From the NCBI GenBank assembly GCA_002269645.1, contig NIVC01000006.1, positions 372,001 through 436,000 on the forward strand: a stretch of 64,000 nt of DNA, given 5' to 3'. A program made the translations under genes and the position numbers. Source of the stretch: Macrostomum lignano (Eukaryota). Positions 4,916-61,885 of this stretch are shown piece by piece (position 1 is the stretch's first letter; every line of letters starts with the position of its first letter). The notes under the pieces are model-generated. The model had not been told where the DNA came from, made no database searches, and saw nothing but the letters and a program-made list of their open reading frames with translations.

Positions 4916-5356
4916 TTATTTCCCGCCGGTGCTTCTCTCGCGAACAAAATCGAACCCACGGACAGAGGCGTCGGCCAGCTCGGCGGGGTAGCACAGCCCG
5001 GCCCCGGCCGTCAGGCCCAGCGCTCCGTAGGCCAGTCGCCGCAGGCCGCCGCCTCGATAGCCGGCCACGACGCCGCCGAGGCCGCACAGACCGACCAGAG
5101 CGGCCCTGGCAACCAGACTGGGATCGGCGCGGACTCGCTCCCAGGTCTCCCAGCTGTGCGCGGAGCCGGTGGCGGCAGCCGCCTGGCCCCGCTGCCAAGC
5201 GGCTGTGATGGCGGCCGTGTCCACGGCTGATCCCACGGCCTGCCTGGCCGGCGACACCAGCGGCTCCAGCGGCGAGGCCGGCGCCGGCTCAAGGACGTAG
5301 GCGCGGTCGGCCAGGTCGTTGCCGTAGATGTCCAGGTCGCGCAGACGGCTCACCAT
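4916..5356 (-). CDS. Apolipoprotein O family / MICOS subunit MIC26-MIC27-like, intronless, 146 aa
   Basis: ATG-initiated GC-rich ORF. LDIY...LEP N-terminal block and Gly-rich hydrophobic hairpin GLCGLGGVVAGYRGGGLRRLAYGALGLTAGAGLCYP resemble the ApoO/MIC26/27 family (recognised from memory, no search run). Confidence 0.7.
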   Translation of the reverse strand: MVSRLRDLDIYGNDLADRAYVLEPAPASPLEPLVSPARQAVGSAVDTAAITAAWQRGQAAAATGSAHSWETWERVRADPSLVARAALVGLCGLGGVVAGYRGGGLRRLAYGALGLTAGAGLCYPAELADASVRGFDFVRERSTGGK

Positions 5357-6427: not shown

Positions 6428-7498
6428 AGCTCTCTAATCTCCCTCAACTCTCTCTAATCTCCCTCAACCATCTCTAATCTCCCTCAACCCTCTCTAATCT
6501 CCCTCAACTCTCTCTAATCTCCCTCAACCCTCTCTAATCTCCCTCAACCCTCTCTAATCTCCCTCAACCCTCTCTAATCTCCCTCAACTCTCTCTAATCT
6601 CCCTCAACCCTCTCTAATCTCCCTCAACCCTCTCTAATCTCCCTCAACCCTCTCTAATCTCCCTCAACCTCTCTAATCTCCCTCTACTCTCTCAATCTCC
6701 CTCAGCTCTTTAATCTCCTTCAACCCTCTCTAATCTCAACTCAACCCTCTCTAATCTCTTTCAAGCATCTCTAATCTCCCTCAACCCTCTCTAATCTCCC
6801 TCAACCCTCTCTAATCTCCCTCAACCCTCTCTAATCTCCCTCTACTCTCTCAATCTCCCTCAGCTCTTTAATCTCCTTCAACCCTCTCTAATCTCCCTCA
6901 ACCCTCTCTAATCTCCCTCAACCCTCTCTAATCTCCCTCTACTCTCTCAATCTCCCTCAGCTCTTTAATCTCCTTCAACCCTCTCTAATCTCTTTCAAGC
7001 ATCTCTAATCTCCCTCAACCCTCTCTAATCTCCCTCAACCATCTCTAATCTCCCTCAACCCTCTCTAATCTCCCTCAACCCTCTCTAATCTCCCTCTACT
7101 CTCTCAATCTCCCTCAGCTCTTTAATCTCCTTCAACCCTCTCTAATCTCAACTCAACCCTCTCTAATCTCTTTCAAGCATCTCTAATCTCCCTCAACCCT
7201 CTCTAATCTCCCTCAACCCTCTCTAATCTCCCTCAACCCTCTCTAATCTCCCTCAACCCTCTCTAATCTCCCTCTACTCTCTCAATCTCCCTCAGCTCTT
7301 TAATCTCCTTCAACCCTCTCTAATCTCAACTCAACCCTCTCTAATCTCTTTCAAGCATCTCTAATCTCCGTCAACCATCTCTAATCTCCCTCAACCATCT
7401 CTAATCTCCCTCAACCATCTCTAATCTCCCTCAACCCTCTCTAATCTCCCTCAACCCTCTCTAATCTCCCTCAACCATCTCTAATCTCCCTCAACCCC
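6428..7498. repeat. Minisatellite, 20-bp unit CTCTCTAATCTCCCTCAACC, starting right at the NDH-2 stop codon
   Basis: About 50 tandem copies with recurrent variants. Confidence 0.95.
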
Positions 7499-10400
7499 CT
7501 AGAACCTAGAGGTGTCCCTGCCAAAAAGCAGCGCTTTAGTCCAGTCCACGGGCACCTGCAGCCGGAGCCGCCAGCTGCCCAGCCTAGTCAGATAGGCCGA
7601 CCGCCACAGCAGCCAAGATGTGAACCCGTGCAGTTTCACGCCGGGCGTGTCAGTCAGAGCTTTAAACTCGCCAATATAAGCCAGCATTCCGCGGCCAGCA
7701 AAACGAAACGGTTCATCTTGGAGTTGAGTGCCGCTGTTGGATTCTGACAGAGGCCCAGTTCGATCCTGATTGAGCCGATTAGCCAGGTAGCGCCCCTGCC
7801 TCTCAGCCACCTGAGCCGTGCACGGCAGCGGACCGTCAACTATGGAAGCGCAATCTCCAATAGCAAATGATCGGCCAGTTTTATCAGCCAGAACTCTCAG
7901 CTGCGGGTCTGTTAACAGCTGACCGCTGGGACTCTTAGGCGCGTCTAGATCGTGTATGAAAGGCCGCGGCGCCAAGCCAGTGCTCCACACAACCAGGCCT
8001 GCAGGCAAGCGACTGCCGTCTCTGAGCGGGTGGGAGCTATCCGAGTGTAAATTATGGGGCTGTAGTTATAGACCTCTAGCGTATGAATTGCTACGAATCA
8101 CGTGACTTCACCGAAGGCTCTGGTCACGTGCCTGTAGGAAATCAAGTGATTTCTATAAGATTCTGCTCACGTGACTTTGAAGGAGATTGATCAAATCACT
8201 ATACAAAAATGTCATTATTATTAGCGATGGTCACGTGACTAAGAATCATTTGACTTTGAAACAATGGCTAGTTTGAAACAACTGTGAAAAACACGTGACT
8301 CTTCATAGACATTCTAAGAAAGCTGATTACATTACTGTATGAAATTCAAATGATTTCTATAGTCCGGAAAAAATCTCTTACTTACAGGTTGCTCACGCTA
8401 TAGAAATCTTGTGACTTTTAAGAAAAAAGGTCACGTGACACAATAAAATTACGTCACCTCAAACAAGCTGGTCAACTCCCTAAAAATCTGGCGATATCTA
8501 GTCTGACCATGTGTCTTTCAAGTTCTAAGACAAATGGTCACGTGACTTCTAATGTTAAGACGAATGGTCACGTGACTTTTATGGATTAAGACGAATGGTC
8601 ACGTGACTTTTATGATTAAAGACGAATGGTCACGTGACTTTTATGGATTAAGACGAATGGTCACGTGACTTTTATGATTAAAGACGAATGGTCACGTGAC
8701 TTTTATGGATTAAGACGAATGGTCACGTGACTTTTATGATCTAAGACGAATGGTCACGTGACTTTTAAGGCCTAAGACGAATGGTCACGTGACTTTTAAG
8801 GCCTAAGAAGAATGGTCTCGTGACTTTTATGATCTAAGACAAATGGTCACGTGACTGTAAAAATTCCGTCTGCAGAGCTAAACAAACCTGAGCGCCGCTC
8901 CCTGGGCGTCAACCGACGCAACAGTTCCCTGTCGCAAGTCGAAATTTTTTCTAGCTCGAATCTTTTTCTCCGCATAATTACGCAACGAGGCGTCGAACGA
9001 GGCAAGAATCTGGGCCGATTCGACCAGGGTGACGCGGACATCGGCGGCTTTGTGCCGGTACAGCCTGGCCAAATCTGTCCGAGCAAAGTCGTACAATTCA
9101 GCGCCGAATTCCACCCCGGTCGGTCCGCCGCCCACAATGACCATACATGCGCAACCTCCAAATTTCGGTCGGCCATGCGACTTAGTTTTAACAAAAATGC
9201 GACGTAGTTTTTGGCCAAAAATGCGACTTACATGTAAAAAAACCCGAAAGCAAAATTAACGCAACTTTGGGTAAACGGCAGGAGTAACTATGACTGTCTT
9301 ATAAAGCCAAAATGCCTCGTCAGCTACTTAGTACTACTACTCTGTGTTTTTTCGGGTTGGCATTTTTGCGACTTCCTTGGTTGGCCGCCAAATCGGTCGG
9401 CCGGATCGGCCGACTCGGCCGACTGTTGCGCATGTATGACAATGACAGTGTGCAGCAGGCGTGCCCGCTCGTCTGGACTGACCCAGGCCTGCTGGGCCAG
9501 CTCAGTGTTCTCAATCAGGCGCTCACGGATTTGCCTGGCGTCGCTCACCTCCTGCCGGAGGTTTTTTCATATTTCATATTAGCTATGGGCATTTCTCTGA
9601 GGCCGATTTATAGTCAGCAATAGAATCCTACAATCCCAAACTAGGGATTGCAGGACACCTTTAAGGATCCCAGACTAGGGATTGCAAGACATCTTTAAGA
9701 AACCCAGACAAGAGATTGCAGGACATCTTTAAGAATCCCAAACAAGGGATTGCCAGACACCTTTAACAATCCTAAACTAGGGATTGCCGGACACCTTTAA
9801 CAATCCCAAACTAGGGATTACCGGACACCTTTAACAATCCCAAACTAGGGATTACTGGACACCTTTAACAATTTTAAACTAGGGACTACCGGACATTTTT
9901 AAGAATCCAAAACTAGGGACTACCGGACATTTTCAAGAATCCAAAACTAGGGACTACCGGACATTTTCAAGAATCCAAAACTAGGGACTACCGGACATTT
10001 TCAAGAATCCAAAACTAGGGACTACCGGACATTTTCAAGAATCCAAAACTAGGGACTACCGGAAATTTTCAAGAATCCAAAACTAGGGACTACCGGACAT
10101 TTTCAAGAATCCAAAACTAGGGACTACCGGAAATTTTCAAGAATCCAAAACTAGGGACTACCGGACATTTTCAAGAATCCAAAACTAGGGACTACCGGAC
10201 ATCTTTAAGAATCTCAAACTAGGGATTACCGGACATCTTTAACAATCCCAAACTAGGGATTACTGGACATTTTCAAGAATCCAAAACTAGGGACTACCGG
10301 AAATTTTCAAGAATCCAAAACTAGGGACTACCGGATATTTTCAAGAATCCAAAACTAGGGACTACCGGACATCTTTAAGAATCTCAAACTAGGGATTACC

Positions 10401-11138
10401 GGACATCTTTAACAATCCCAAACTAGGGATTACTGGACATCTTTAAGAACCCAAAACTAGGGACTGCCGGACACCCTAAAAACTTCAAATTAAGGAATTA
10501 GCAGAAACCCTAATTAAGAGAATAGAAGACATTATTAAGAATCCAAAATCAAGGGATTAACAGACACCTTTAAGGATAAATTACACGGGGATAAATCCAC
10601 AGACTTTAAATATTTTATTAGGGCCTTACTCAAATCTCACCTTGAGAAAGAAGGCGTGCTCATTAACACCGGGCACGCCAAAGGTATTAGTGAGCGCACC
10701 CACCCCAATAATCAATCGATCATAGCCAATCTGATAGGATGCTCGACTTCCCAAACAGGAACGGCAGGTGACTTCGCGCAGATTAAAGTCCACCTCAGTG
10801 GCCTCGGCCAGATGGAAATGGTCCGACTGTCTGAAGCCATACTCGCGCACCGGCTCAATAATGGAACGAAACTCAAGCGTACCAACAGTTGTTGAGCACA
10901 GCAGCGGGGTGAATAGAAAGTGATTCCTAGGCGACACGACAATGACGTCAAATTTTGATTTGTCAACATTGCGCAGAGCCGAGTAGCTGCCCCAGCCCGT
11001 GCCCAGAATTACAAGACGCTGCCGGCTGCCATTTTGATAATCTGCTGATGCAGAATGGCGGCAGCGGATGCTGCATTTTTGAAGCCTAAAGCTGTTACAA
11101 CAGCGACGGCTTAGAGGAAGGAGCAGCAATGATGCCAA
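7499..11138 (-). CDS. Type II (alternative, rotenone-insensitive) mitochondrial NADH:ubiquinone oxidoreductase, Ndi1/Nde-like; exon 2 interrupted by a MITE; no genomic ATG
   Basis: Exons 11138-10641, 9551-8888 (MITE plus one TSD = 305 bp to be removed) and 8021-7499, all GT-AG, give 1380 nt = 460 codons in frame. Motifs: RLVILGTGWG, SPRNHFLFTPLL, YDRLIIGVGA, VIVGGGPTGVEFGAEL, VVWSTG, FAIGDC, TAQVAERQGRYLA, WLLWRSAYL...DW...LFGRD. Arg/Ser/Leu-rich presequence-like N-terminus. Confidence 0.9.
8520..8860. repeat. Intronic minisatellite, ~31-bp unit with palindromic core GTCACGTGAC
   Basis: About 11 units of AAGACGAATGGTCACGTGACTTTTATGGATT, in the NDH-2 intron 8022-8887. Confidence 0.9.
9142..9438. 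mobile_element. 297-bp MITE with 14-bp TIRs and 8-bp TSD (hAT- or P-superfamily type) inserted in NDH-2 exon 2
   Basis: TIR CATACATGCGCAAC at 9142-9155 and its exact reverse complement at 9425-9438. TSD ACAATGAC at 9134-9141 and 9439-9446. Subterminal GTCGGCC repeats. Confidence 0.93.
9630..10480. repeat. Intronic minisatellite, 34-bp unit AAGAATCCAAAACTAGGGACTACCGGACATTTTC
   Basis: About 25 tandem copies in NDH-2 intron 9552-10640. Confidence 0.95.
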
Positions 11139-13905
11139 CTGAAAGCAGAAATTTGCATTGTACTCAGCTATAAAATGCTTTTAGAGTGTGCTTGGTGAGA
11201 GTAGTATCAGACAGTAGTATGAGAGTTATAAGATGGGAGCATCTATTAATTTACTAAGCCTAGGCCTTGTACATTGTATAGTCTTTTGTATAGCAGCAAC
11301 ACCACGAATGCATTTTTCTTATTTTAAAAATGAAATACCTTTTCAGGTTAAAAATAGGCACTCTGTCTTAACTAAATAAAATGTCTTATTTAGAATTCAG
11401 TTAGCTCAAGGGTGTTAGCAGCTCAACTGATTTTCTACAAACTTGCAAAAAAGCAAAAAAGGTGATGGAAAATAAATTTGGTAAGATTTTCTTAAAGGTA
11501 CTCTCATGCAATAGATTTGAAATAATTTGTCATTATTTGCATGGTACCTTGTAAATAACAAATGCCTTTATTAAAATGCTTCATTCTTTCTTAAATTTCA
11601 TTTTGCATTTCTGTCCAATTTCTTAAAGCCAATAGTCATTGTTAAGAACTTTTACTCAGACACAATGAGAAGTCAAAATGGCCATTATTAACACCATTCA
11701 GCATCTCCACTTCTAGATTTTTCTAATTGATAAGAGCAGGCATATTGCTAAGATTTTATTAAACTGGAGTCTAAATTTGCCTCCTTCATTGTCATAGAAT
11801 TTGTCCATGGTGAATCTCTATTGCCAGAATGGTTAGCACCTGTTGAAAAGTTAGCAAAAGCTAGGCCTTACTTGTAATACTTGCAATATTTGCTTGTTTT
11901 GTTTGGATTATATTTGTCTCTCACTATTAGTAGGGACTGGTAAGATATAGAAATTTGACCAAAATCAAAACACTTAAAAATGTTTTTTCTAATATAAAAA
12001 ACAACCTAGTAGATAACTAAAAAAATAAATTAAGCAACATAGAAAGAGATACTCTAGAAGAAAAATAATTTTAGTAGTATTATTGAACTATAATACTACT
12101 AAAATACTTATTGTATTATTTTAGAAAAGTAGTATTATTGAAAATGTCAATTTTAATACATAAAACAGAATTGAAACAAATTTTCTTTTTAGTTAGGAAT
12201 CTATTTCCTAGGTAAGTAGGTATCTAGGTAGGTGCAAAAGCAGAAATTAGAGAGAAGTAAGCAAATGAGAGAGTACTCAGTGTGAAAGCTTGGAGGAAAA
12301 GATTGAAGGAAATGAAAGGGAAGAGGAATCAAATCTTGAGCACAAAGGAGAGAGAGAAAATGAGGAGGAGGTTATATGCGAGTGAATGAATCAAAGGAAA
12401 AGATATTGCATGCCAAGCAATGTGAGGATTATGTTATCCTAACCAACAAGAACAAACCAAGGTAGATCCAACCAAGAACAAATGAGGTAGATCTTGGTGT
12501 TGTGCATTGGAGCTCAGTCTATAGCTTTAGTGCATTATTGTTTTTCTGTCTATGTTGTATACTATGTGACTTAAGCTTTGCTCAACTTTCATTCTGTTAT
12601 TGTTTAGTAAGTCTATGGCTACTCTTTCTTTCTCAGAGCTCCCCTCTGGGTTTTAGCCCTTCTTCCTCTCAAGACTCTACCTAGAGCTATGCACTCAAGA
12701 TTCCTAATTCTACCATCAAATACAAACAATAACTTTGCACTACTTGTCACCTTAATCTTGACACACATCACCTGGCCTAGGTGCCAACTTCCCAGCTATC
12801 TTGGATAAGTTATTAAGAGGCTAGCATGAGCAAATTAAGCAACTGGTGAACATCCTAAAAGGGTCATTTGGTTTACATGGCCTACCTGCACACAGATTGG
12901 CCTACATCATGCTGGTATACACATGCCAGGAAGGAATTTTTGTACAAAATCCTAGATGCATTCTGTGCGCACAGACAAAAACTTGTGCACTTCTTGCAAA
13001 CTTGCAAAAGGCTTACGTGTGCAGGTTTTTTACACTATTAAAACTTGCAACTACAAAAAAATGTGCATGTATGTAATTAAACATTGAAGTATTCAAAGAT
13101 TGTTAAAAATATTTTAATGTTTTAAACTCTGTGGGCTTTTTACTAATTTTAAGATGCCTTTTTAAATCTTATACTTTCTTTGTTATATGTCATGCAACTT
13201 TAAATTAAAATTAACACCTTGTACATTCTCTTTTCAAATCAGCCAAATTACACAAAATGGCATCAAAAGTCAAAACAGTTTAAATGTATAAAGTTTAAAA
13301 ACTTTTGTGTTTTAAAAGTAATAAACAGTTTTTTAAGATTATTGTAAATATATCACTAGGTCAAAATAACTGTCTTTTTCATTCATTCATATTAAAAAGA
13401 TAAATCAGAAATGTTTAGCATTACTATTAGAGCACCTATTACTAGTAGTTAAATTATTTTTTTTAAACTTTTATATAAAAATATTCAATTAATTTGTCAA
13501 TTCATTAATTCAAGAAAGAGTACATTTAATTTTTGTGCTATTTCTTAATTATTGATCAAATCAACTAGTGGCTCTAATTTTATAAAAAAATTTATTAGTC
13601 TTAATGCTATGACTATAACTATCTATGAACTATTCAAAAATGTCTTTGTGGTGGTTATGGAAATTTTACTTATTACTTATTAATTTCTTTAATCTCTAAT
13701 AAATATTTAAAGCAATGAATGATATTATTGATATTATAACTTTATAAGGATGTATACAGATAAGGATAAGGATATTTCTCTGATTTCAAAATGCCTATGC
13801 CTGTTGCCTTAGTTTTTGCAGCATCTAGCTTTATTACTTTGGCAATATTATCATATATAATGTCTGATAGTATTAACTAGTGGTGTAGATAAAGAAAATA
13901 AAGCT

Positions 13906-30555: not shown

Positions 30556-30660
30556 AACTTAAGGCGAGAAATTCTTCAACCTTAGGGATCGTAATTGTGC
30601 CCTCCAGTTCGGAACGCTTATTTTCACAGCCTTTATTTATTAACCCTCTCCTCAACTCAG

Positions 30661-31986
30661 TTCGCCATTCGCCACCTGTCAGCGCCGGCCCATCTCGGGC
30701 TGAGCACGGTTCGCTGCTGCTCGTTGAACTCCGGCAGCCTGCTGGCCGCCAACGCTCGCCAATCCCAGTTTGGCTCGCTGTTGCGCAATCGATTGCGTAA
30801 TCAGAGTCGATCTCCGCTAGGCGGCAACGCCATCCGCCGGTGCCACTCGTCGGCGCCTCCGTCGGCTTCGCCGGTCTGGCACCCGATGGTGGCGCATCTC
30901 ACCGCTGGCCAGAGACGCGCCGTCGGCATCTGGCTGGCCACCTGCGCCGGGATGACCGCTGGAGCCGTTGTGCTCGGCGGCCTGACCCGGCTCACGAGGT
31001 CCGGCCTGAGCATGACCAACTGGTCGCTGTTTAAGGTGTTTAAGGGTTACTGCGTATGTCTCTAATCTCACTCAGTCTCTGATCTCACCCAGACTCTAAT
31101 CTCACCCAGGCTTATCTCATCCTTACTGTTGTCTCACCATGACTTATCTTACATAAATCTAGTCTCACCTCGACTCGAATCTCACATTTACTCTAATCTT
31201 AACCCAGCTTTAGTTTCACACTGACTTGAATCTCACTCTGTTTCATCTCCCCCACCCCTAGTCTAATCTCAACAATAATCTAATCTAACCTTTCTCTTAC
31301 CTCACTCTGACTCTAATCTTACCCTTAGCTCTAAAATCTCATCGTTGTCGCTAATTGTCCCTTTTGTCCTCAAACTCAATGCGTTTCTAATCTCACAGTG
31401 TGCCCAATCTCATCTTTAGCTCAAAAGTCATCATTACTATTGGCTCTAATCTTATCATGCTCATATTCTCTCTCACGCGCCCAATCCATTATCAATGGAA
31501 TCCAGGAGCTACCGCCAGTGACTCAGGCAGACTGGGAGCGGGAGTTCCAGCGCTACCAGGCCTACCCGGAGTACGAGTACATCGTGCGCGAGCGAGGCAG
31601 CATGTCGCTGAACGATTTCAAAGCCATCTTCTGGCTGGAGTTTCTGCACAGAACCTGGGGTCGGGCGATCGGAGCTGCCTTCCTCCTGCCGGCCGCTTAC
31701 TTCTGGGCTCGGGGCCGCTTTCAGGTGGGCTGTGCCAGCCAAGATAGGGGCTCGGGTCACGTGATCTGACCATTGGATGTAACTGTACAGCCCAAATTAG
31801 GTTAGTTAGTTCGTTAGTTAGTTAAATCACTTAGTAGGTACTTAGATAGATAGTTACGCTCGTAGTTAATTAATCTGTAATTAGTTCGTTAATTAGATGG
31901 ATAGTTAATTAGTTAGTTATTTATTCAGTTAGTTAGTTAGTTAGTTAGTTAGTCAGTTAGTTAGTTAGTCAGTTAGTTAGTTAGTC

Positions 31987-36034: not shown

Positions 36035-39000
36035 TCTGCCGAAGTTGCTTCGTCCGCCGCAGCGGACCGGCCTCCAATTGAGGTGGCCGTCCTTCTGTCC
36101 GACGAGAAGGAGCGCAAGCTGCGCCTCTTCGAACGGTGCCGTCAGAATCCGCCGTCTGGGGTTCGATTCCACCGACTAGATTTAGACGAACTGCTGCAGT
36201 CGGGCAGTCGCTATAGAGTTGTGCTGCACAAGATTCACTCGGAATTGACCTCGAATAAACCCGAATCGATCGATCGTGTCCGGCGGTTTAAAGCTTGGAT
36301 AGAGGCAAGAGGCTCCGAGTTGGTTCTGTTGGACCCTCTGCGCGGCCTCGAGTCCATGCTGCTGTACCGCTTTGCCCAGTGCCAAGCTATGTCCAGGTGT
36401 GCTGGGGCAAAATAAATTTGCCTATTGTGTTCGATTGATTAATCCGCATTTGGTTAGAATATGTTAAGTAGCCAAATCACATGCATACACATCTGTCCAC
36501 GTACTTAAATGCATTCCCGCCCAAGCAGATGTACATTCGGATATCCTCCCAGTCATATGTACATCTTCGCCCATGCAAATGTAACAGTAAACTGCCACGC
36601 ATATGTGATGTACATTATACGCATATCCGCCCAAGCATACGTACGCGCAAATGTACACACCCGCCCACGCACATGTACACATACCCGCCCACGAACATGT
36701 ACACATACCTGCCCACGCACATGTACACCTGCCCGCCCACGCACATGTACACATACCTGCCCACGCACATGTACACACACCCAGGCACTTGTACCGGTAC
36801 ACCTGCCCGCCAAGGTACATGTACACAGACACACACAGGCACTTGTACCGGTACACCTGCCCGCCCACGCACGTACACAAATCCTTCCACGCCGTGAAAT
36901 TTACAGATGCGTCGCCGCATGCCCCGAGCCGCTGCGCCAGCGGGTGTTCGTGCCCCGCTACGCCCTCGTCCAGAACCCTGGCGACCCCGTCGCCGACTCC
37001 AACGGCGCGCTCCGCTTCCCGCTGCTGTGCAAGCCGCATCTGGCCTCCGGAGCGGAGGCGCACAGTATGTCGCTGGTGTTCAATGCCGGACAGCTGGCCG
37101 ACCTGCGGCCGCCCTTGGTGGCTCAGGAGTTTGTCAATCATGGTGCTAGGATTATCAAGGTAAGCATTGATAATTTCCTTTATTTCGGTCCGATAATCCA
37201 GACTCATTTCCTGATTCTTTACTACCAGATAATCCTCATCTTCACTACCAGATAATCCGCCCCTTCACTACCAAATAATCCACCCCTTCACTACCAAATA
37301 ATCCACCCCTTCACTACCAGATAATCCACCCCTTCACTACCAGATAATCCACACCTTCACTACCAGATAATCTGCCCCTTCACTACCAGATAATCTGCCC
37401 CTTCACTACCAGATAATCTGCCCCTTCACTACCAGATAATCTGCCCCTTCACTGCCAGATAATCCACACCTTCACTACCAGATAATCTGCCCCTTCACTA
37501 CCAGATAATCTGCCCCTTCACTACCAGATAATCTGCCCCTTCACTACCAGATAATCTGCCCCTTCACTACCAGATAATCTGCCCCTTCACTACCAGATAA
37601 TCTGCCCCTTCACTACCAGATAATCTGCCCCTTCACTACCAGATAATCTGCCCCTTCACTACCAGATAATCTGCCCCTTCACTACCAGATAATCTGCCCC
37701 TTCACTACCAGATAATCTGCCCCTTCACTGCCAGATAATCTGCCCCTTCACTATCCGATAATCTGCCCCTTCACTACCAGATAATCTGCCCCTTCACTAC
37801 CAGATAATCCGCCCCTTCACTACCAGATAATCTGCCCCTTCACTACCAGATAATCTGCCCCTTCACTACCAGATAATCTGCCCCTTCACTACCAGATAAT
37901 CTGCCCCTTCACTACCAGATAATCTGCCCCTTCACTGCCAGATAATCCACACCTTCACTACCAGATAATCTGCCCCTTCACTACCAGATAATCTGCCCCT
38001 TCACTACCAGATAATCTGCCCCTTCACTGCCAGATAATCCACACCTTCACTACCAGATAATCCACACCTTCACTACCAGATAATCTTCATCTTCACTACC
38101 AGATAATCCGCCCCTTTACTGCCAAATAATCCGCCCCTTCACTACCAGATAATCCGCCCCTTCACTACCAGATGATCCACACCTTCACTACCAGATAATC
38201 TGCCCCTTCACTATCCGATAATCCGCCCCTTCACTATCCGATAATCCGCCCCTTCACTATCCGATAATCCGCCCCTTCACTATCCGATAATCCGCCCCTT
38301 CACTATCCGATAATCCGCCCCTTCACTATCCGATAATCCGCTCATTCACTACCAGATAATCCGCCCCTTCACTGCCAGATAATCCGTCCCTTCACTGCCA
38401 GATAATCCGCCCCTTCACTGCCAGATAATCTGCCCCTTCACTATCCGATAATCTCCCCTTTCACTACCAGATAATCCGCCCCTTCACTACCAGATAATCT
38501 GCCCCTTCACTACCAGATAATCTGCCCCTTCACTACCAGATAATCTGCCCCTTCACTACCAGATAATCTGCCCCTTCACTACCAGATAATCTGCCCCTTC
38601 ACTGCCAGATAATCCACACCTTCACTACCAGATAATCTGCCCCTTCACTACCAGATAATCTGCCCCTTCACTACCAGATAATCTGCCCCTTCACTGCCAG
38701 ATAATCCACACCTTCACTACCAGATAATCCACACCTTCACTACCAGATAATCTTCACCTTCACTACCAGATAATCTGCCCCTTCACTACCAGATAATCTG
38801 CCCCTTCACTACCAGATAATCTGCCCCTTCACTACCAGATAATCCGCCCCTTCACTACCAGATGATCCACACCTTCACTACCAGATAATCTGCCCCTTCA
38901 CTATCCGATAATCCGCCCCTTCACTATCCGATAATCCGCCCCTTCACTATCCGATAATCCGCCCCTTCACTATCCGATAATCCGCCCCTTCACTATCCGA

Positions 39001-40754
39001 TAATCCGCCCCTTCACTATCCGATAATCCGCTCATTCACTACCAGATAATCCGCCCCTTCACTGCCAGATAATCCGTCCCTTCACTGCCAGATAATCCGC
39101 CCCTTCACTGCCAGATAATCTGCCCCTTCACTATCCGATAATCTCCCCTTTCACTACCAGATAATCCGCCCCTTCACTACCAGATAATCTGCCCCTTCAC
39201 TACCAGATAATCTGCCCTTCACTACCAGATAATCTGCCCCTTCACTACCAGATAATCTGCCCCTTCACTACCAGATAATCTGCCCCTTCACTGCCAGATA
39301 ATCCACACCTTCACTACCAGATAATCTGCCCCTTCACTACCAGATAATCTGCCCCTTCACTACCAGATAATCTGCCCCTTCACTGCCAGATAATCCACAC
39401 CTTCACTACCAGATAATCCACACCTTCACTACCAGATAATCTTCACCTTCACTACCAGATAATCTGCCCCTTCACTACCAGATAATCTGCCCCTTCACTA
39501 CCAGATAATCTGCCCCTTCACTACCAGATAATCCGCCCCTTCACTACCAGATGATCCACACCTTCACTACCAGATAATCTGCCCCTTCACTATCCGATAA
39601 TCCGCCCCTTCACTATCCGATAATCCGCCCCTTCACTATCCGATAATCCGCCCCTTCACTATCCGATAATCCGCCCCTTCACTATCCGATAATCCGCCCC
39701 TTCACTATCCGATAATCCGCTCATTCACTACCAGATAATCCGCCCCTTCACTGCCAGATAATCCGTCCCTTCACTGCCAGATAATCCGCCCCTTCACTGC
39801 CAGATAATCTGCCCCTTCACTATCCGATAATCCGCCCCTTCACTATCCGATAATCCGCCCCTTCACTATCCGATAATCCGCCCCTTCACTATCCGATAAT
39901 CCGCCCCTTCACTACCAGATAATCCGCCCCTTCACTATCCGATAATCCGCCCCTTCACTACCAGATAATCCGCCCCTTCACTACCAGATAATCCGCCCCT
40001 TCACTGGCAGATAATCCGCCCCTTCACTACCAGATAATCTGCCCCTTCACCGCCAGATAATCCGCCCCTTCACTGCCAGATAATCCGCCCCTTCACTGCC
40101 AGATAATCCGCCCCTTCACTGGCAGATAATCCGCCCCTTCACTACCAGATAATCCGCCCCTTCACTGGCAGATAATCCGCCCCTTCACTACCAGATAATC
40201 CGCCCCTTCACTGGCAGATAATCCGCCCCTTCACTACCAGATAATCCGCCCCTTCACCGCCAGATAATCCGCCCCTTCACTGCCAGATAATCCGCCCCTT
40301 CACTGGCAGATAATCCGCCCCTTCACTACCAGATAATCTGCCCCTTCACCGCCCCCTTCAACCGCAGGTGTACGTCCTTGGCAGCCGAATTCACGCCTGC
40401 ATTCGTCCGTCAGTTCGCGATTTCCAGGCCGATTACGCCGGCCCGGCCATCCAGTTCTCCAGCCACGCCGTCTCCAAGGCCGGCTGCCAGTCCGAGCTGT
40501 CCGACGCCGCTGCCTCCGCTCAAAACGGCGATGACGGCGAGATGCTGCTGTCCCGCTACTCCGGCCTGCTGGAGCCGCTGTGCCGTGCGTGCCGCTCTGT
40601 GCTCGGCCTCGACCTGCTCAATTTGGACCTGGTGCCCGACACCCGATCTGGTAGATTAGGCCTGGTAGACATTAACCAGTTTCCCGGATTCGAGTCCATG
40701 CCCAACTATGTTGACGCTCTGGTTGAGTTGATCAAGCTGAAGGTTAATTATTAG
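36035..40754 (+). CDS. ITPK1: Inositol-tetrakisphosphate 1-kinase (ATP-grasp), 3 exons; no genomic ATG
   Basis: Exons 36035-36396, 36907-37159 and 40368-40754 join in frame (1002 nt). Motifs [20 protein letters not shown]...[50 protein letters not shown]. Confidence 0.9.
36480..36880. repeat. Degenerate ~24-bp repeat (CATGTACACATACCTGCCCACGCA) in ITPK1 intron 1
   Basis: Direct. Confidence 0.8.
37215..40355. repeat. Intronic minisatellite, 23-bp unit CCAGATAATCTGCCCCTTCACTA, with ~690-bp higher-order repeat
   Basis: Roughly 135 copies. Diagnostic variants recur at 38341/39031/39721 (CTCATTCACT) and 38171/38862/39550 (GATGATCCACACC). Confidence 0.95.
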
Positions 40755-44505: not shown

Positions 44506-46368
44506 TCAAGCCAGCTCCACTTTCATCTGGTCGCTCTGCTTCGATTGTGACTTCGGCTTTGACGACTTCTTCTGCAGTTTGATCTCCTCTTCGTCGCTGG
44601 ATCCGCCCGGATACTCTTGGCTGCTGTCGTCTTCATCGTCCTCCTCCTCCTTCGGCTGCTCCGCCCGCTGCTCCATGTCGATGCTGATGACGTCATCGTT
44701 TAAAGCGGAGCCGGTGCTCAAAGCGCCGCCGCGCCCGCCGCAACGGCAGCCGACAGGCCGCATCTGCGCTACGGTGTTTGGCATGGCGCGGCCACGTGAC
44801 TCCGGCAGTAGCAGCGCCGCCAGGCCGGCCAAGACGGTGACCGATCCGTACAGCAGGCTGGGCAGGTGCGGGTACACCTGGGACAGGATGCCGCCCAGCT
44901 CCGGGGCCATGAACTGGCCGAGGCCCATCACGCTGAATGCAAAGAACAGCGAGCAGCTGCGCACGGTCGTGGGCAGCACCTCGGAGCCGTAGACGTTCAG
45001 CTCGCTGTAGGCGACGGTGATGCTGAACTTCACCGCGATGGCCACGCAGCTGTGCGCCTGGAACACCACGCTGGGGTCTCTGGGAATGAATGGCATGAGG
45101 ATGAGGCCCAGGCCGCAGAAGCACATGGTGATCACGGTGGTTGGCTTCCTACCAATTCGATTGATCATCTGCCAGGCGATGAGGTAGGCCGGCACCTCCA
45201 ACAGGCCGGAGATGAGCACGTTCAGGTACGGATCCAAGGTGATGAAGTCGCGCTGAAAGCACATGGCGTGATAGACAAATGCGGCGGTGAAAAAGTTGAC
45301 AGTAACCACGGCCAGGGTGATCAAATAATCGGCGTTGAAGATGTTCTCCTTGGGCAGGCACTTGAGGATGCGCCTTGAGGACGCGGAGTCTTCGCCGCTG
45401 TTGACAAATTCGTTGTCGGTCAGTTCGAACTTGTCCAACGCGTTCGGGCAGCCTGAAAATTTGCACACCTGTCGGAGAATTTTCTCCGCCCGACGCGTCT
45501 TGCCCCGGGTGAGCAGCCAGCGAGGCGACTCGGGCAGCACCGGGATGTAGGTGGCGAAGCTCAGGCCCGTGATGACCACCACGGCCATCATCTGGTGTCG
45601 CCAGTTCAGCATGTAGTAGCTAATTGCGGCAGAGCTGCTGTAGGCCACCACCCAGGTCATCCAGAACATGTTGCCGTGCAGGCTGCGGTAGTTTTCCCCG
45701 ACCAGCTCCGTGATGAGTATGAGGCCCATAAGCAGGGCGGGGTCGCCACAGCCCATGAAGAATCTGAGCACCATCTGGGCGGTGAGATCCTTGACGAAGA
45801 CCACAGCCAGGTTGCATGCCAGGTTGAGGTAGCAGAAAGCCACAAGCACTGTCTTGCGGCCGAGCAGATCGCCCAGAGGCCCGACCAGGGTGGACAGGAA
45901 GACGCCGAACTGCAGCACCGTCTGCATTCGGTCGTTGAGATACTGCCTATCGCAGACCATTTCGTACTCGATCAGCATGGTCCACCGGTCCGGGTGGTCG
46001 GGGTTGAACTGCCACGCCTCGCACTTCTCAGTCCCGGTGGCGGCAGCGGAGCTCGAATCGTTCTGAAAGTCATCCTCCAGGTTCAACAGACCGTCAGCGC
46101 CGCGCCAGAACCTCGGCGCTCTGCAGGTGAACTGCTCGATGCTAAAATTCAACGCGAAGCTGTTATTTGCAAGGACGTCAGTCCAGGACAAAGTCTGATT
46201 GTCCACGATCGCTTGGGCGCAGTGGAACGGCACGCTAGCCGTAGCCAAGTTCGTCACGAACATGTCGAATGCGGACTTCATGGACAGCACGGACAGCAGG
46301 ATGGTGATGGTCCAGCGGTAGCCGGGCCCCGACTTGGAGATTTGCTTCAGCAGTTCTTCGTAATTCAT
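44506..46368 (-). CDS. SLC22-like organic cation/anion MFS transporter, paralog 1, intronless, 620 aa
   Basis: Large Cys-containing extracellular loop after TM1 (EYEMVCDR), GDLLGRK, LPESPRWLL, RIGRK, YGSEVLPTTVRS, LLLPESRG; about 12 hydrophobic segments; acidic tail. Confidence 0.92.
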   Translation of the reverse strand: MNYEELLKQISKSGPGYRWTITILLSVLSMKSAFDMFVTNLATASVPFHCAQAIVDNQTLSWTDVLANNSFALNFSIEQFTCRAPRFWRGADGLLNLEDDFQNDSSSAAATGTEKCEAWQFNPDHPDRWTMLIEYEMVCDRQYLNDRMQTVLQFGVFLSTLVGPLGDLLGRKTVLVAFCYLNLACNLAVVFVKDLTAQMVLRFFMGCGDPALLMGLILITELVGENYRSLHGNMFWMTWVVAYSSSAAISYYMLNWRHQMMAVVVITGLSFATYIPVLPESPRWLLTRGKTRRAEKILRQVCKFSGCPNALDKFELTDNEFVNSGEDSASSRRILKCLPKENIFNADYLITLAVVTVNFFTAAFVYHAMCFQRDFITLDPYLNVLISGLLEVPAYLIAWQMINRIGRKPTTVITMCFCGLGLILMPFIPRDPSVVFQAHSCVAIAVKFSITVAYSELNVYGSEVLPTTVRSCSLFFAFSVMGLGQFMAPELGGILSQVYPHLPSLLYGSVTVLAGLAALLLPESRGRAMPNTVAQMRPVGCRCGGRGGALSTGSALNDDVISIDMEQRAEQPKEEEDDEDDSSQEYPGGSSDEEEIKLQKKSSKPKSQSKQSDQMKVELA

Positions 46369-52291: not shown

Positions 52292-54019
52292 TCACACTCT
52301 TAGCGGCTTCATCTCTTCGCCGCAGGCCTCCCCAGCCGATGCTCCCTGCCGCTCCGCCTCATCGCTGCCCGACACGCAGCAGGGACAGCCCACCTGTTCC
52401 ATCTCGGCCACGGTGTTGGGCATGGGCTTGTCCTTGGTCTCGGGCAGCAGCAGGATAGCTAGGCTGGCCAGAACCGAGATCACACCATAGAGCAGGTAGG
52501 GCAGGTGGATGTACCATTGGGCCAGAGCTCCGCCCAGCTCCGGGGCAAGGATTTGAGCCGAGCGCATCAGAAAGCAGGCGAAGAAGAATGAGCAGCTGCG
52601 AACTTTGGTTGGCAGCACCTCGGAGCCGTAGACAGCCAGGACGCTGAAGGCTACGGTGACGCTGAACTTGATGGCGATAGCCAGGACGCTACTGCCCTGA
52701 AACACCACTTCCGGGTCGGTGGGCACATAAGGCAGAATTATGAGGCCGACACCGCAGAAAGCCATGGTGCCGAGACAGGTGTACTTGCGGCCGGCCCTGT
52801 TCGTGAGCTGCCAGGCCAGGATGTAGGCCGGCAGCTCAAGCAGGCCAGAGATCAGCACGTTCAGGTACGGATTATTGGTGATAAAATCGCGCTTGAACGA
52901 CAGGGCGAAGTAGACAAGCGACACGGTGAAGAAGTTGAAGGTCACAACGCCCACGGTGACAAGGTAATCCAGGCGGCACAGGTTCTCTCGCGGTATGAAC
53001 TTAAAGATGCAGCTCTGCTCCTCCCGCTCGTTCGTGTGCTCCGGTGGATCAACCAGCTCGTTGTGCTCGAAGTTGAACTCATTGAGCACCTCTTTGCAGC
53101 CCGAGTACTTGCTGACCTCTTTCAGAATCTTCTTAGCTCGCTTGGTTTTACCACGAGTGAGCAGCCAACGCGGTGACTCCGGCAGCACCGGGATGTAGGT
53201 GGCGTACCCCGCTCCGATGATGAGCACGACTACCACCATTTGAATGCGCCAGTTGTAGATAAAGTAGCTGATTGCTGCTGAGCCGCTGTAAGCGAACACC
53301 CACAGAGTCCAGACTAGGTTGCCATGGATACCGCGATAGTCCTCCGCCACCAGCTCCGTGATGAGTATGATCCCAATGAGCACGGCGGGCGCGCCGAAAC
53401 CCATGCAGAATCTGAGCACCATCTGCAGGGTGAGATTGCGGACGAAGATCACGGCTATGTTGCAGGTGAGATCCAGGTAGCAGAAGGCCACGAGCAGCGG
53501 CTTCCGACCGAGAATGTCGCCCAGAGGACCGAATATTGTCGACAGGCAGATGCCGAACTGCATGACGGTCTGCATGCGGTCCATCAGGTACTTGCGGTCG
53601 CACACCATCTCGTACTCCATGAACATTGTCCACCGCTCGGGTGGGTCCGGCCTAAACGTCCAGGCGCCGCAGACCTCCTCCTTGGGCGTCGCGGTCGACC
53701 CATTGCCGCCAGCCGCCGAGGCCATGGCCATGTGCAGCGAGCCGTCCAAGCCGCGCACGAACTTCGGCCGCTGACAGGTGAAATCGTTGATGCTAAAATT
53801 GGTAGCGAAGGTGTTGTTGGCGAGCACCTCCGACCAGGGCTGCACGGCGCCGTCCACCAGCGCTTCGGCGCAGTGGTAGGGCACGCTGGCGGTGGCCAGG
53901 TTCAACACGAACATGTCGAATGCGGACTTCATGGATAGGAAGGCGATGAGCACGGTGATGATCCATCGGTAGGCCGGGCCTGACTTGGATATGTGAGTCA
54001 GCAGGTCTTCGTAAAGCAT
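52292..54019 (-). CDS. SLC22-like MFS transporter, paralog 2, intronless, 575 aa
   Basis: ATG at 54019 (MLYEDLL, matching MNYEELL of paralog 1; the ORF-track start at 54085 is a non-ATG codon). Same motifs: EYEMVCDR, LPESPRWLL, YGSEVLPTKVRS. Confidence 0.92.
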   Translation of the reverse strand: MLYEDLLTHISKSGPAYRWIITVLIAFLSMKSAFDMFVLNLATASVPYHCAEALVDGAVQPWSEVLANNTFATNFSINDFTCQRPKFVRGLDGSLHMAMASAAGGNGSTATPKEEVCGAWTFRPDPPERWTMFMEYEMVCDRKYLMDRMQTVMQFGICLSTIFGPLGDILGRKPLLVAFCYLDLTCNIAVIFVRNLTLQMVLRFCMGFGAPAVLIGIILITELVAEDYRGIHGNLVWTLWVFAYSGSAAISYFIYNWRIQMVVVVLIIGAGYATYIPVLPESPRWLLTRGKTKRAKKILKEVSKYSGCKEVLNEFNFEHNELVDPPEHTNEREEQSCIFKFIPRENLCRLDYLVTVGVVTFNFFTVSLVYFALSFKRDFITNNPYLNVLISGLLELPAYILAWQLTNRAGRKYTCLGTMAFCGVGLIILPYVPTDPEVVFQGSSVLAIAIKFSVTVAFSVLAVYGSEVLPTKVRSCSFFFACFLMRSAQILAPELGGALAQWYIHLPYLLYGVISVLASLAILLLPETKDKPMPNTVAEMEQVGCPCCVSGSDEAERQGASAGEACGEEMKPLRV

Positions 54020-54434
54020 AGCTCTGCTCTGGCGCTCGGTTCTTTCCAAAGAGAAACTTACAATAGCAGAGAAGCTCACTGGCAAGCCGTTGTCAAGATT
54101 TCTTTTTGCCGCTCTTAACTTCTTTCGCTCGCCACTTCACTTTATTGCACTTCTCTCTAGGAAGCCCCACGAGCCACACACGCTTGTGCCGCTTCTCTGT
54201 TTGCTCGCTGCAGGGGGGGGGGGTCGGTGGAGGCGCTTGATTGGCTCGCAGCAACAGCTGCATAATCATGCGAGGGGGGGCCGTGGGACGATCCCCAACA
54301 CCTCAGAAAGTGGAGAGGCCAGAAGCGCGGCTGGCGGTGCGAATAAATCGCGCCAAGAGGCGATCAGAAAAACTGAAACAAAGCCGTTTGGCCCGCCTTC
54401 ACTGCTTGGCCAGGGGAGACAGAGTAAGACAGAG

Positions 54435-60119: not shown

Positions 60120-61885
60120 ATGCTTTCAACCGCACTAGAGAAGATGCAGTACGAAGAACTACTCACCAAAATTTCAAAGTCCGGACCCTGCTACCGATGG
60201 GTCATCACCAATCTTATCGCCATCATTTCCATGAAAGCCGCATTCGACATGTTCATACTGAACCTGGTCACGGCCAGTGTGCCCTTCCACTGCGCTGAGA
60301 TCACGCTTGACAACCAGACGGTGCCATGGTCCAGCATCGCTCACAATGCGAGCATGCCTGACAACTTCACCATCAACAGCTTCATCTGCAGTCGTCCTCG
60401 GTTGTTTCGAGACTCGGACGGATCGCTGCGACTCGAATCATCGTCCGAAGGAAACGCATCGACGGTTAATCGGACCAGCGTCCCGGCCGAGGCCTGCAGC
60501 GCGTGGACGTTCTTGCCTGACCCGCCAACCCGCTGGACCATGTTCATGGAGTACTCCATGGTGTGCGAGCGACAGTACTTGATGGATCGAATCCAGACGA
60601 TGCTGCAGTTCGGAATCTGTCTGTCCACCGTGTTTGGTCCCCTGGGCGACATTATCGGCAGAAAGACGGTGTTGGTCGGCTTTGCCTATCTGGACATTTC
60701 CTGCAACATTGCTGTGATATTCGTCCAAGACCTGACGCTGCAGATGGTGCTGCGCTTCATCATGGGGTTCGGTGCTCCAGCGGTCATCATCAGCACCATT
60801 CTCATAACGGAGCTTGTGGCGGAGGACTACAGAGGCATCCACGGAAATCTAATGTGGATTCTGTTCTGCTTAGGATACAGCGGTTCGGCGGCCATCAGCT
60901 ACTTCATTCACAACTGGAGAGTGCAGACAGCGGTGGCCTGCGCCATTGCTGGAGTCGGCTACGCCACATTTATTCCGGTCATTCCGGAGTCTCCGAGATG
61001 GCTGCTCACGCGCGGCTACACAAAAAGAGCCAAGAAAATATTAAAAGAAATCTGCAAGTTTTCCGGTTGCAAGGAGGTGCTCAACGAGTTTAACTTTGAG
61101 CACAACGAGCTGGTTGAGCCTCCGGATGAAAACAAGCCCCAGAGGAGAACTGTATTTTCAAAATTTTTCCCAGGGAGAACCTATGCCGGCTGGAGTACTT
61201 TGTCACTGTCGGTGTACTATCGTTCAACTTTTTCACCGTGTCCCTGGTCTACTTCGCTCTGTCGTTCAAGAGAGACTTCATCACAAAAGATATCTACCTG
61301 AACGTGCTGATCTCTGGCCTACTGGAGATTCCGGCCTACATCCTGGCCTGGCAGCTCACCAACAGGGCTGGCCGCAAGTACACCAGCATGGCTAATATGG
61401 CATTCAGTGGAGTTGGACTTATCATCATGCCTTTCATTCCAACCAACCCGAACATTGTGTTCCAAGGCAGCAGCGTGCTGGCAATCGCCGTCAAGTTCAG
61501 CGTCACCGTTGCCTTCAGTATCCTGGCCGTCTACGGATCCGAAGTTTTGCCGACTAAAGTCCGCAGCTGCTCATTCTTCGTTGCCTCCATTTTGATGCGG
61601 GGCGCTCAACTGCTGGCACCGGAGATCGGCGGTGCTCTGGCGAGTCTCTACGACAACTTGCCGTCTCTGTTGTACGGCGTGATCTGCGTCCTGGCCAGCC
61701 TGACCATCCTGCTCCTGCCCGAGAGCAAGGACAGGCCGATGCCCAACACCGTGGCTGAGATGGAGCCTGTGGGCTGTCCCTGCGGCGCCCGGAGAACTGA
61801 ACTTGCAACCAATGCTTCCGGCGCCAATGCTCAAGTTGATGAAGACGAGATGAAACCTCTGCAAGTGTTCTCCGTGGACGTTTGA
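60120..61885 (+). CDS. SLC22-like MFS transporter, paralog 3, intronless, with a single-base frameshift at 61137-61140
   Basis: ORFs 60120-61301 and 61238-61885 are two halves of one gene. Adding one C to CCCC gives NKPPEENCIFKIFPRENLCRLEY, collinear with paralog 2 (SCIFKFIPRENLCRLDY). The homologous start is probably ATG 60144. Confidence 0.88.

What the first reader, a model, noticed from the sequence alone, without database searches (positions are those of the whole stretch)
11130..11185. NDH-2 has no ATG: the first exon opens at an acceptor, in frame for a spliced-leader AUG
Seen: minus strand TTCTGCTTTCAG|TTG GCA TCA. An in-frame stop lies at 11181-11183 with no in-frame ATG before the acceptor, and the first native Met is in the last exon. 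Adding AUG gives MLASLLLLPLSRRCCNSFR, a convincing mitochondrial presequence. Known: flatworm spliced leaders end in a conserved AUG that can serve as the initiator (shown in Schistosoma). Inference: translation depends on SL trans-splicing.
Basis: partly seen in the sequence, partly recalled or inferred. Interest (0 to 1): 0.75.

Follow-up and report, generated by a model that had tools for sequence, protein, structure and literature searches.

The report
Flatworm NDH-2 gene lacking a start codon
This copy of a mitochondrial alternative NADH dehydrogenase gene of the flatworm Macrostomum lignano has no start codon of its own and most likely borrows the AUG at the end of the trans-spliced leader, which is a known flatworm trick, and the copy is also damaged by a small transposon.

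Summary
On the minus strand TTCTGCTTTCAG|TTGGCATCA puts an acceptor at 11140-11139. The in-frame stop TAA is at 11183-11181, and no in-frame ATG follows before the enzyme core.

The window is Macrostomum lignano Mlig_3_7, NIVC01000006.1:372001-436000. This flatworm's 35-nt spliced leader ends in ATG, and its trans-splice acceptor motif [T/C]TNCAG matches TTTCAG here.

Adding the leader's AUG gives a 46-residue basic presequence, within the orthologue range. All four public models of the gene are 5'-partial. No convincing upstream coding exon exists.

A homeologous copy (NIVC01001740.1) reads ATG exactly where the window reads CAG, inside 524 otherwise almost identical bases. That ATG is either real or written in when the assembly was polished with RNA-seq reads. 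Either way it places AUG directly before UUG GCA.

No leader-bearing read could be reached, so the last step is inferred.

The mechanism has been known since 2006: an ordinary new member, of moderate-to-low interest. COX15 at 30661 looks like a second case.

The parts
11181..11183 (-). In-frame stop codon TAA upstream of the first coding exon. It closes the frame 14 codons before the acceptor.
11139..11150 (-). Pyrimidine tract plus 3' splice acceptor TTCTGCTTTCAG. TTTCAG (11144-11139) matches the M. lignano trans-splice acceptor motif [T/C]TNCAG. This is the proposed site of spliced-leader addition.
   Evidence: motif from PMC8629364; phase and motif scan
11156..11158 (-). Out-of-frame ATG in the outron. 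It opens a 15-codon upstream ORF that overlaps the coding start. Trans-splicing at 11138 would remove it.
   Evidence: direct reading
10641..11138 (-). First coding exon of NDH-2 (166 codons, LASLLLLPLSRRCC…AFFLK), with no ATG in frame. The donor is AAG|GTGAGA.
   Evidence: tblastn of P0001 and P0123
9552..10640 (-). Intron 1 (GT-AG), mostly a 34-bp minisatellite (9632-10473).
9439..9551 (-). Exon 2, left part (EVSDARQ…LLHTVIV). It ends with the first copy of the target duplication GTCATTGT (9446-9439).
9142..9438 (-). 297-bp non-autonomous DNA transposon (MITE) inserted in the exon, just before the codons for the GGGPTG NADH-binding motif. Inverted ends are CATACATGCGCAAC and GTTGCGCATGTATG, and the target duplication is 8 bp. 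It is absent from the paralogue, where the exon is continuous.
   Evidence: read-through model P0121 ends in a stop inside it, and P0123 splices it with cryptic sites
8888..9141 (-). Exon 2, right part. It begins with the second target-duplication copy (9141-9134), then GGGPTGVEF…AAL. The donor is CAG|GTTTGT.
7499..8021 (-). Last coding exon (…DGSRLPAGLVVWSTG…GRGMLAYIG…GRDTSRF), with stop TAG at 7501-7499. It holds the only genome-encoded Met of the undisrupted protein.

Best explanation
The pre-mRNA of this NDH-2 gene is trans-spliced at the acceptor TTTCAG| (AG at 11140-11139). The 35-nt M. lignano spliced leader, which ends in ...UUGCAUG, is joined to UUG GCA UCA at 11138. The leader's terminal AUG then becomes codon 1 and gives MLASLLLLPLSRRCCNSFRLQK…, a basic mitochondrial presequence in front of a type-II NADH:quinone oxidoreductase.

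Trans-splicing also discards the outron with its out-of-frame ATG.

Shown: the anatomy of the site, the organism and its leader, and the lack of any alternative start. Inferred: the actual leader-exon junction and its use for initiation.

In this copy a 297-bp transposon sits in the exon before the NADH-binding motif. Translation started in this way probably yields a truncated product (233 aa in the NCBI model) or one carrying a 13-residue insertion. The intact enzyme would come from the homeologous copy or copies.
For: 1. Identity. The window is identical to NIVC01000006.1 of M. lignano Mlig_3_7. The best protein hit is M. lignano A0A1I8HLR4 at 99% identity.

2. Leader. The M. lignano leader ends in ATG, and 30-39% of genes are trans-spliced (PMC8629364; PMC5730564). 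All flatworm leaders end in AUG. In Schistosoma mansoni the leader's AUG is in frame in 28% of trans-spliced mRNAs, and more than 40 cDNAs need it for initiation (Cheng et al. 2006, as cited in PMC9851317 and PMC12582326).

3. Site. TTTCAG matches [T/C]TNCAG and lies in phase 0. It is the only one of three in-phase AGs that fits the motif.

4. No alternative start. There is no in-frame ATG from the stop at 11183 until the last exon.

5. N-terminal length. With the leader's Met, 46 residues precede GTGWG. For 115 orthologues the interquartile range is 32-53.5. The presequence has 8 K/R, and its first acidic residue is at position 34.

6. Paralogue. The copy L001 (NIVC01001740.1) reads CTGCTTTATGTTGGCATC where the window reads CTGCTTTCAGTTGGCATC, so its genome sequence encodes MLASLLLL…. 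Across 524 nt around this site the two copies differ only here and at one other base.
   - The older ML2-assembly model of that same locus (P0001) is identical to the L001 protein except at this codon, where it has Q (CAG).
   - Mlig_3_7 was Pilon-polished with RNA-seq reads, and leader trimming that leaves the ATG on reads is an established practice in the genus.
   - The ATG is therefore either a real allele or an imprint of leader-bearing reads. Both readings place AUG directly 5' of UUG GCA.

7. Selection. dN/dS between the copies is 0.16, so the gene has been under purifying selection despite having no ATG.

8. Public models. All four models (P0001, P0123, P0121, P0122) are 5'-partial. 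The two UniProt models run unspliced into the outron rather than to an upstream exon.
Against: - No leader-containing read, EST or transcript contig for this gene could be retrieved. The protein cluster holds only genome-derived models.
- The Mlig_3_7 gene models start 24 and 36 nt downstream of the acceptor, not exactly at it. The authors' trans-splice-peak pipeline therefore did not visibly set this boundary.
- The two ML2 models begin at 11165-11167, directly after another AG (11169-11168). Leader addition there would put its AUG out of frame, ending in a 19-codon ORF.
- The leader's AUG has a weak context (U at -3, U at +4).
- This copy carries a disruptive transposon, so it may not be a working gene at all.
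Confidence: 0.72

Rival explanations
1. This copy is a decaying homeologue. It is not translated into a working enzyme, and the missing ATG is simply part of its decay. The functional gene is the paralogue, which has its own genomic ATG.
For: - A 297-bp transposon interrupts the exon just before the GGGPTG NADH-binding motif.
- The RNA-seq-based NCBI model reads into the transposon and stops at 233 aa (P0121).
- The paralogue L001 has ATG and an uninterrupted exon.
- M. lignano carries three homeologous copies of this region, so redundancy exists.
Against: - The missing ATG is not private to the damaged copy. The ML2 model of the undamaged locus also has CAG (P0001).
- Random loss of a start codon would rarely produce, through two adjacent changes, a perfect in-phase YTNCAG acceptor.
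- dN/dS is 0.16, and the window copy keeps the conserved residue R in …GRDTSRF where the paralogue has M.
- The transposon may simply be recent. This rival concerns the fate of the copy and is compatible with leader-AUG initiation.
Confidence: 0.15
2. The leader is added at a different AG. One option is 11169-11168 (exon start 11167), which is out of frame and gives a non-productive mRNA or one dependent on the paralogue's ATG. The other is one of the in-phase AGs giving exon starts at 11177 or 11162, which would add 13 or 8 residues to the N-terminus.
For: - Both UniProt/ML2 models start with EYNANFCFQ. Their transcript 5' end therefore lies at 11165-11167, directly after TTTTATAG|.
- Exon starts 11177 and 11162 are also in phase 0.
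- Genes with several trans-splice sites are known in M. lignano.
Against: - None of these AGs fits [T/C]TNCAG, and their pyrimidine tracts are poorer (7-9 of 16 against 10 of 16, with purines next to the AG).
- The paralogue's ATG marks 11138, not the other sites.
- An out-of-frame leader AUG would leave CAG-type copies untranslatable, which is hard to reconcile with dN/dS of 0.16.
Confidence: 0.07
3. An upstream cis-spliced exon supplies the ATG in phase 0. This is the refutation the reader proposed.
For: The acceptor alone cannot tell cis- from trans-splicing. The two copies are conserved for about 1.8 kb upstream.
Against: - In 10 kb upstream only two ATG…|GTRAG phase-0 candidates exist: a bare ATG at 19736-19734 and a 9-codon piece at 15732-15706. 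Neither has coding support.
- NCBI annotates no gene in those 10 kb.
- The N-terminus is already of normal length.
- The paralogue has no AG at this position, so nothing can be spliced onto it there.
- The public models run unspliced through the acceptor.
Confidence: 0.03
4. Translation starts at a non-AUG codon on an mRNA that is not trans-spliced, for example UUG at 11138-11136.
For: The first codon after the acceptor is TTG. The ML2 models suggest that transcripts containing the outron exist.
Against: - From established knowledge, UUG is a poor eukaryotic initiator.
- An out-of-frame AUG lies 18 nt upstream (11158-11156) and would capture scanning ribosomes.
- Nothing positive supports this reading.
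Confidence: 0.03

Closest known systems
Schistosoma mansoni mRNAs that use the spliced leader's 3'-terminal AUG as initiator (Cheng, Cohen, Ndegwa & Davis, J Biol Chem 2006; cited in PMC9851317 and PMC12582326)
   Same: - A flatworm leader that ends in AUG.
- The recipient exon begins in phase 0 at the acceptor.
- There is no genomic start codon, so the leader's AUG is required to open the correct frame.
   Different: - Different flatworm lineage (free-living Macrostomorpha) and a different leader sequence.
- The junction here is inferred, not sequenced.
- One homeologous copy shows a genome-encoded ATG at the same codon.
slORFs: reading frames created by spliced-leader addition (slORFfinder, PMC9851317)
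   Same: [quoted passage not shown]
   Different: That study called slORFs from leader-containing reads and ribosome footprints in nematodes, Oikopleura and trypanosomes. It did not analyse M. lignano.
Spliced-leader trans-splicing in M. lignano (Wudarski et al. 2017, PMC5730564; Ustyantsev & Berezikov 2021, PMC8629364) and in M. cliftonense and M. hystrix (PMC10468722)
   Same: The same organism, leader and acceptor motif [T/C]TNCAG. The G3 paper explicitly notes the final ATG as a likely translation start codon.
   Different: The parts of these papers I searched name no individual gene that relies on the leader's AUG. This NDH-2 (BOX15_Mlig008243g1 and Mlig017334g1) is annotated only as 'partial'.
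Metazoan alternative NADH dehydrogenases (NDH-2; yeast NDI1 type; Ciona NDX)
   Same: 60-64% identity to molluscan, echinoderm, annelid, brachiopod and tunicate NDH-2. It has the Pyr_redox_2, Pyr_redox and NDH2_C domains, two GxGxxG motifs and an N-terminal presequence.
   Different: Nothing unusual in the enzyme itself. Only the way the start codon is supplied differs, together with the transposon in this copy.

Membership tests
Flatworm mRNAs initiated at the spliced-leader AUG | The organism has an SL RNA whose leader exon ends in AUG. | tested here: met
   The window is M. lignano. The published 35-nt leader ends in ATG (PMC8629364). No SL RNA gene lies in the window itself.
Flatworm mRNAs initiated at the spliced-leader AUG | A 3' splice acceptor lies directly before the first coding base, in phase 0 with the ORF. 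| tested here: met
   TTTCAG|TTG at 11139/11138 is in phase 0 and fits [T/C]TNCAG.
Flatworm mRNAs initiated at the spliced-leader AUG | No genome-encoded in-frame AUG can produce the functional protein. | tested here: met
   The stop is at 11183-11181. The first in-frame Met of the undisrupted protein is residue 398 of 459. All public models are 5'-partial.
Flatworm mRNAs initiated at the spliced-leader AUG | The leader sequence is found joined to that acceptor in cDNA or RNA-seq reads. | not testable with these tools
   No transcript-derived sequence for this gene is in the searchable collections. The only indirect trace is the ATG in the RNA-seq-polished paralogue.
Flatworm mRNAs initiated at the spliced-leader AUG | The protein N-terminus starts with the leader-encoded Met. 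| not testable with these tools
   This needs N-terminal proteomics or a reporter assay.
Type II NADH:quinone oxidoreductase (NDH-2 / NDI1 family) | Pyr_redox_2 fold with two dinucleotide-binding motifs, plus the NDH2 C-terminal domain. | tested here: met
   Pfam: PF07992 at 1.1e-37, PF22366 at 1.7e-15 and PF00070 at 1.7e-05. The motifs GTGWG and GGGPTG are present. There are 5448 homologues, the best non-self at 60-64% identity.
Type II NADH:quinone oxidoreductase (NDH-2 / NDI1 family) | An uninterrupted reading frame in this copy. | tested here: not met
   A 297-bp transposon sits between …LLHTVIV and GGGPTG…. Read-through stops after 233 aa (P0121).
Non-autonomous DNA transposon (MITE; the 8-bp duplication suggests the hAT type) | Terminal inverted repeats, a target-site duplication and an empty site in a related sequence. 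| tested here: met
   The inverted ends are 14 bp and the duplication GTCATTGT is 8 bp. The paralogue shows the exact empty site, and a 79-82% similar copy lies at L001 3223-3419. The superfamily assignment is from memory and was not tested.

The most novel reading that the evidence does not exclude
The same codon position may be a trans-splice acceptor (CAG, start codon donated by the leader) in one homeologue and a genome-encoded ATG in another. That would mean leader-donated and cis-encoded initiators have interconverted recently within one genome through a two-base change. This requires the ATG at NIVC01001740.1:159520-159522 to be real.

The alternative reading is about equally likely. 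RNA-seq polishing may have written the leader's ATG into the reference assembly at a trans-splice site. That artefact could affect many M. lignano gene starts.
Probability: 0.35. Interest if true: 0.55.

Novelty: new member of a known kind. Interest (0 to 1): 0.3.

Why it matters
If confirmed, this explains why the M. lignano NDH-2 models, and probably COX15, are annotated as 5'-partial in both UniProt and GenBank. Their start codon is not in the genome.

For this model flatworm it is a practical annotation rule. At trans-splice sites in phase 0, the leader's ATG should be prepended before ORFs are called. Otherwise mitochondrial presequences and true N-termini are lost.

The CAG/ATG difference between copies and between assemblies is worth a quick check. 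It is either a neat natural experiment on swapping a donated for an encoded start codon, or a warning that RNA-seq polishing can imprint leader bases into a reference genome.

The biology itself, leader AUG as initiator, has been known since 2006.

Tried and rejected
- **Transcript search.** I searched the protein collection with only the N-terminal 75 residues (M added) to find transcript-derived fragments. It returned only distant short hits and no M. lignano sequence.
- **Cluster look-up.** The cluster holds four genome-derived models and nothing that starts MLASL.
- **Supplementary tables.** None are held for the trans-splicing paper. Wasik et al. 2015 is not held.
- **Leader fragments in the genome.** I scanned the window and loci for leader 3' ends of 7-12 nt. 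There were only chance-level 7-9-mers and no SL RNA gene. Rfam and tRNA scans of the window found nothing.
- **COX15 paralogues.** I tried to reach them to see whether their acceptor shows the same CAG/ATG dimorphism.
- **Further NAG/ATG differences.** I found none among about 44 kb of aligned homeologous sequence.
- **A correction to my own estimate.** I first treated the two-base CAG/ATG change as astronomically unlikely. Adjacent double substitutions are in fact about 6% of differences between these copies (73 against 1124 single differences). The chance estimate is therefore only about 1e-3 to 1e-4.
- **The transposon as an intron.** I rejected this because no cut within the target duplication gives GT-AG.
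Full report
**What is at the coordinates.** Read on the minus strand, 11150-11130 is TTCTGCTTTCAG|TTG GCA TCA. The AG is at 11140-11139 and the exon starts at 11138. In the frame of TTG GCA TCA there is a TAA at 11183-11181, and the 14 codons between it and the acceptor hold no ATG. The one ATG nearby (11158-11156) is out of frame. The frame then runs open to a GTGAGA donor after 10641 and encodes LASLLLLPLSRRCCNSFRLQKCSIRCRHSASADYQNGSRQRLVILGTGWGSY….

**Gene and organism.** The spliced protein (459 aa without a Met) hits 5448 homologues. The best is a Macrostomum lignano UniProt entry at 99% identity, followed by mollusc, echinoderm, brachiopod, annelid and tunicate NDH-2 at 54-64%. Pfam gives Pyr_redox_2, Pyr_redox and NDH2_C. 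The window is NIVC01000006.1:372001-436000 of the M. lignano Mlig_3_7 assembly.

**The leader.** M. lignano uses one 35-nt leader, CGGTCTCTTACTGCGAAGACTCAATTTATTGCATG. It is found on 30-39% of genes, and the top motif at trans-splice acceptors is [T/C]TNCAG (PMC8629364; PMC5730564). TTTCAG at 11144-11139 fits this motif.
- A 3'-terminal ATG has been reported for all parasitic-flatworm leaders (PMC12582326).
- In Schistosoma mansoni the leader's AUG is in frame in 28% of trans-spliced mRNAs, and more than 40 cDNAs need it (Cheng et al. 2006, as cited in PMC9851317).
- For Macrostomum the final ATG has been flagged as a likely translation start codon (PMC10468722).

**Tests of the inference.**
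- Phase and motif: three AGs in the open stretch are in phase 0, giving exon starts at 11177, 11162 and 11138. Only the last fits YTNCAG and has a decent pyrimidine tract. An in-phase YTNCAG within 15 codons is expected about 0.04 times by chance.
- Completeness of the N-terminus: with the leader's Met there are 46 residues before GTGWG. For 115 orthologues that start with Met the interquartile range is 32-53.5. The segment has 8 K/R and its first acidic residue at position 34. Nothing appears to be missing upstream.
- Upstream exon: in the 10 kb upstream there are only two ATG…|GTRAG phase-0 candidates, and neither is credible. NCBI annotates no gene there.
- Public models: all four are 5'-partial. 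UniProt A0A1I8HLR4 and A0A1I8I8Y7 begin EYNANFCFQLASL…, running unspliced through the acceptor into the outron. GenBank PAA94571 and PAA64560 begin 24 and 36 nt inside exon 1.

**The most informative result.** It comes from the homeologous copy on NIVC01001740.1 (L001). Its sequence is CTGCTTT ATG TTGGCATC where the window has CTGCTTT CAG TTGGCATC, so that copy encodes MLASLLLL… in the genome.
- Over 524 nt around the site (window 11471-10948) the two copies differ only at these two bases and at 11191.
- Adjacent double substitutions are not rare between these homeologues: 73 against 1124 single differences in 44 kb. Even so, a double change at exactly these bases and to exactly AT has a chance of roughly 1e-3 to 1e-4.
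- The ML2-assembly model of that same locus (P0001) is identical to the L001 protein at all 459 positions except this one, where it has Q (CAG).
- The three homeologous contigs are 2-4% apart, so P0001 is unlikely to come from a third copy.
- Mlig_3_7 was built from the same PacBio data but was polished with Pilon using RNA-seq reads mapped by STAR (PMC5730564). Trimming the leader while leaving its ATG on the reads is a practice used in the genus.

I therefore see two readings of about equal weight. Either the ATG was imprinted by leader-bearing RNA-seq reads, which would be indirect read-level evidence for trans-splicing at exactly this acceptor. Or it is a real allele in which the acceptor was converted to an encoded start. 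I could not retrieve any leader-containing read or transcript, so the junction remains inferred.

The sequence treated as the intron between exons 2 and 3 is not an intron. The paralogue has one continuous exon, …CTGCACACT GTCATTGT GGGCGGCGGA…. The window has a 297-bp insertion (9438-9142) with 14-bp inverted ends (CATACATGCGCAAC and GTTGCGCATGTATG), flanked by an 8-bp duplication GTCATTGT. No cut within the duplication gives GT-AG.
- The GenBank model reads into the element and stops after 233 aa.
- The UniProt model uses weak cryptic sites and inserts SHGRPKFGGCACM directly before VIVGGGPTG, the NADH-binding strand.
- The window copy is therefore probably crippled.

Even so, dN/dS between the copies is 0.16 (13 synonymous and 6 non-synonymous differences). 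The window copy also keeps the conserved R in GRDTSRF where the paralogue has M. The gene has evidently been under selection without a genomic ATG, and the insertion is probably recent.

**Residual doubts.**
- The two ML2 models start at 11165-11167, just after another AG (TTTTATAG|, 11169-11168). Leader addition there would put the AUG out of frame, giving a 19-codon ORF. This could be an alternative non-productive site or simply an unprocessed transcript end.
- The leader's AUG has a weak context.
- The Mlig_3_7 gene boundaries were not set at 11138.

**A second candidate in the same window.** The first exon of COX15 (plus strand) is open from 30595, with a TAA at 30592-30594, and has no ATG until 30886. 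Starting at that ATG would leave only 30 residues before GGxTRLTxSGLS. Only 1.7% of 117 orthologues are that short, and the median is 85. An in-phase acceptor CTCAG|TTC (exon start 30661) with the leader's AUG gives 106 residues, and the first 70 contain 9 K/R and no acidic residue. The UniProt model is again 5'-partial. This suggests that leader-donated starts are not rare in M. lignano.

**Verdict.** It belongs to a known kind of mechanism, so it is a new member, not a new kind. The added points are a transposon-damaged copy and an unresolved CAG/ATG dimorphism between homeologous copies and assemblies.

Noticed in passing
window 9142-9438 (target duplications at 9439-9446 and 9134-9141): A 297-bp MITE-like element with 14-bp inverted ends and an 8-bp target duplication is inserted in the NDH-2 exon just before the GGGPTG motif. 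The paralogue shows the exact empty site. A 79-82% similar copy lies at L001 3223-3419.
   Followed up: yes
L001 9962-9964 (NIVC01001740.1:159520-159522) against window 11141-11139: The homeologous NDH-2 copy reads ATG where the window reads CAG. The older ML2 model of that locus has CAG. Mlig_3_7 was polished with RNA-seq reads, so the ATG may be an imprint of spliced-leader reads rather than a real variant.
   Followed up: partly
window 30595-31035 (+), acceptor AG 30659-30660, first genomic ATG 30886-30888: The COX15 first exon also lacks an upstream ATG. An in-phase acceptor at 30661 plus the leader's AUG would give a 106-residue presequence region that is basic and free of acidic residues. 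The first genomic ATG would leave almost no presequence. The UniProt model is 5'-partial.
   Followed up: partly
window 10948-11471: A 524-nt tract spanning the outron and the first 63 codons is identical between the two homeologues, apart from one SNP (11191) and the CA/AT pair. Flanking non-coding sequence is 5-7% diverged. This suggests recent gene conversion or strong constraint.
   Followed up: partly
window 11165-11169: Both UniProt (ML2) models begin at 11165-11167, directly after TTTTATAG|. This may be an alternative trans-splice site where the leader's AUG would be out of frame, opening a 19-codon ORF.
   Followed up: partly
window 9632-10473, 8526-8856, 6430-7497: Minisatellites fill the NDH-2 introns and 3' flank: 34 bp x 25 in intron 1, 31 bp x 11 in the last intron, and 20 bp x 54 starting two bases after the stop codon. 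Many more occur across the window, for example 23 bp x 136 at 37217-40349, and they explain the strong GC-skew blocks.
   Followed up: no
window 4916-5356 (-): An ApoO/MIC26-like gene (146 aa, weak Pfam hit below the cut-off) lies 2.1 kb downstream of NDH-2 on the same strand, about 1.1 kb after subtracting the minisatellite. With COX15 that makes three mitochondrial genes within 30 kb. A possible operon was not examined.
   Followed up: no
window 44506-46368 (-), 52292-54085 (-), 60120-61885 (+): There are three paralogous single-exon MFS transporter genes (Pfam Sugar_tr and MFS_1 on the copies in L003 and L004). The third is split into two overlapping ORFs (60120-61301 and 61238-61885), which suggests a frameshift or a short intron. 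The region exists in three homeologous contigs that are 96-98% identical.
   Followed up: partly
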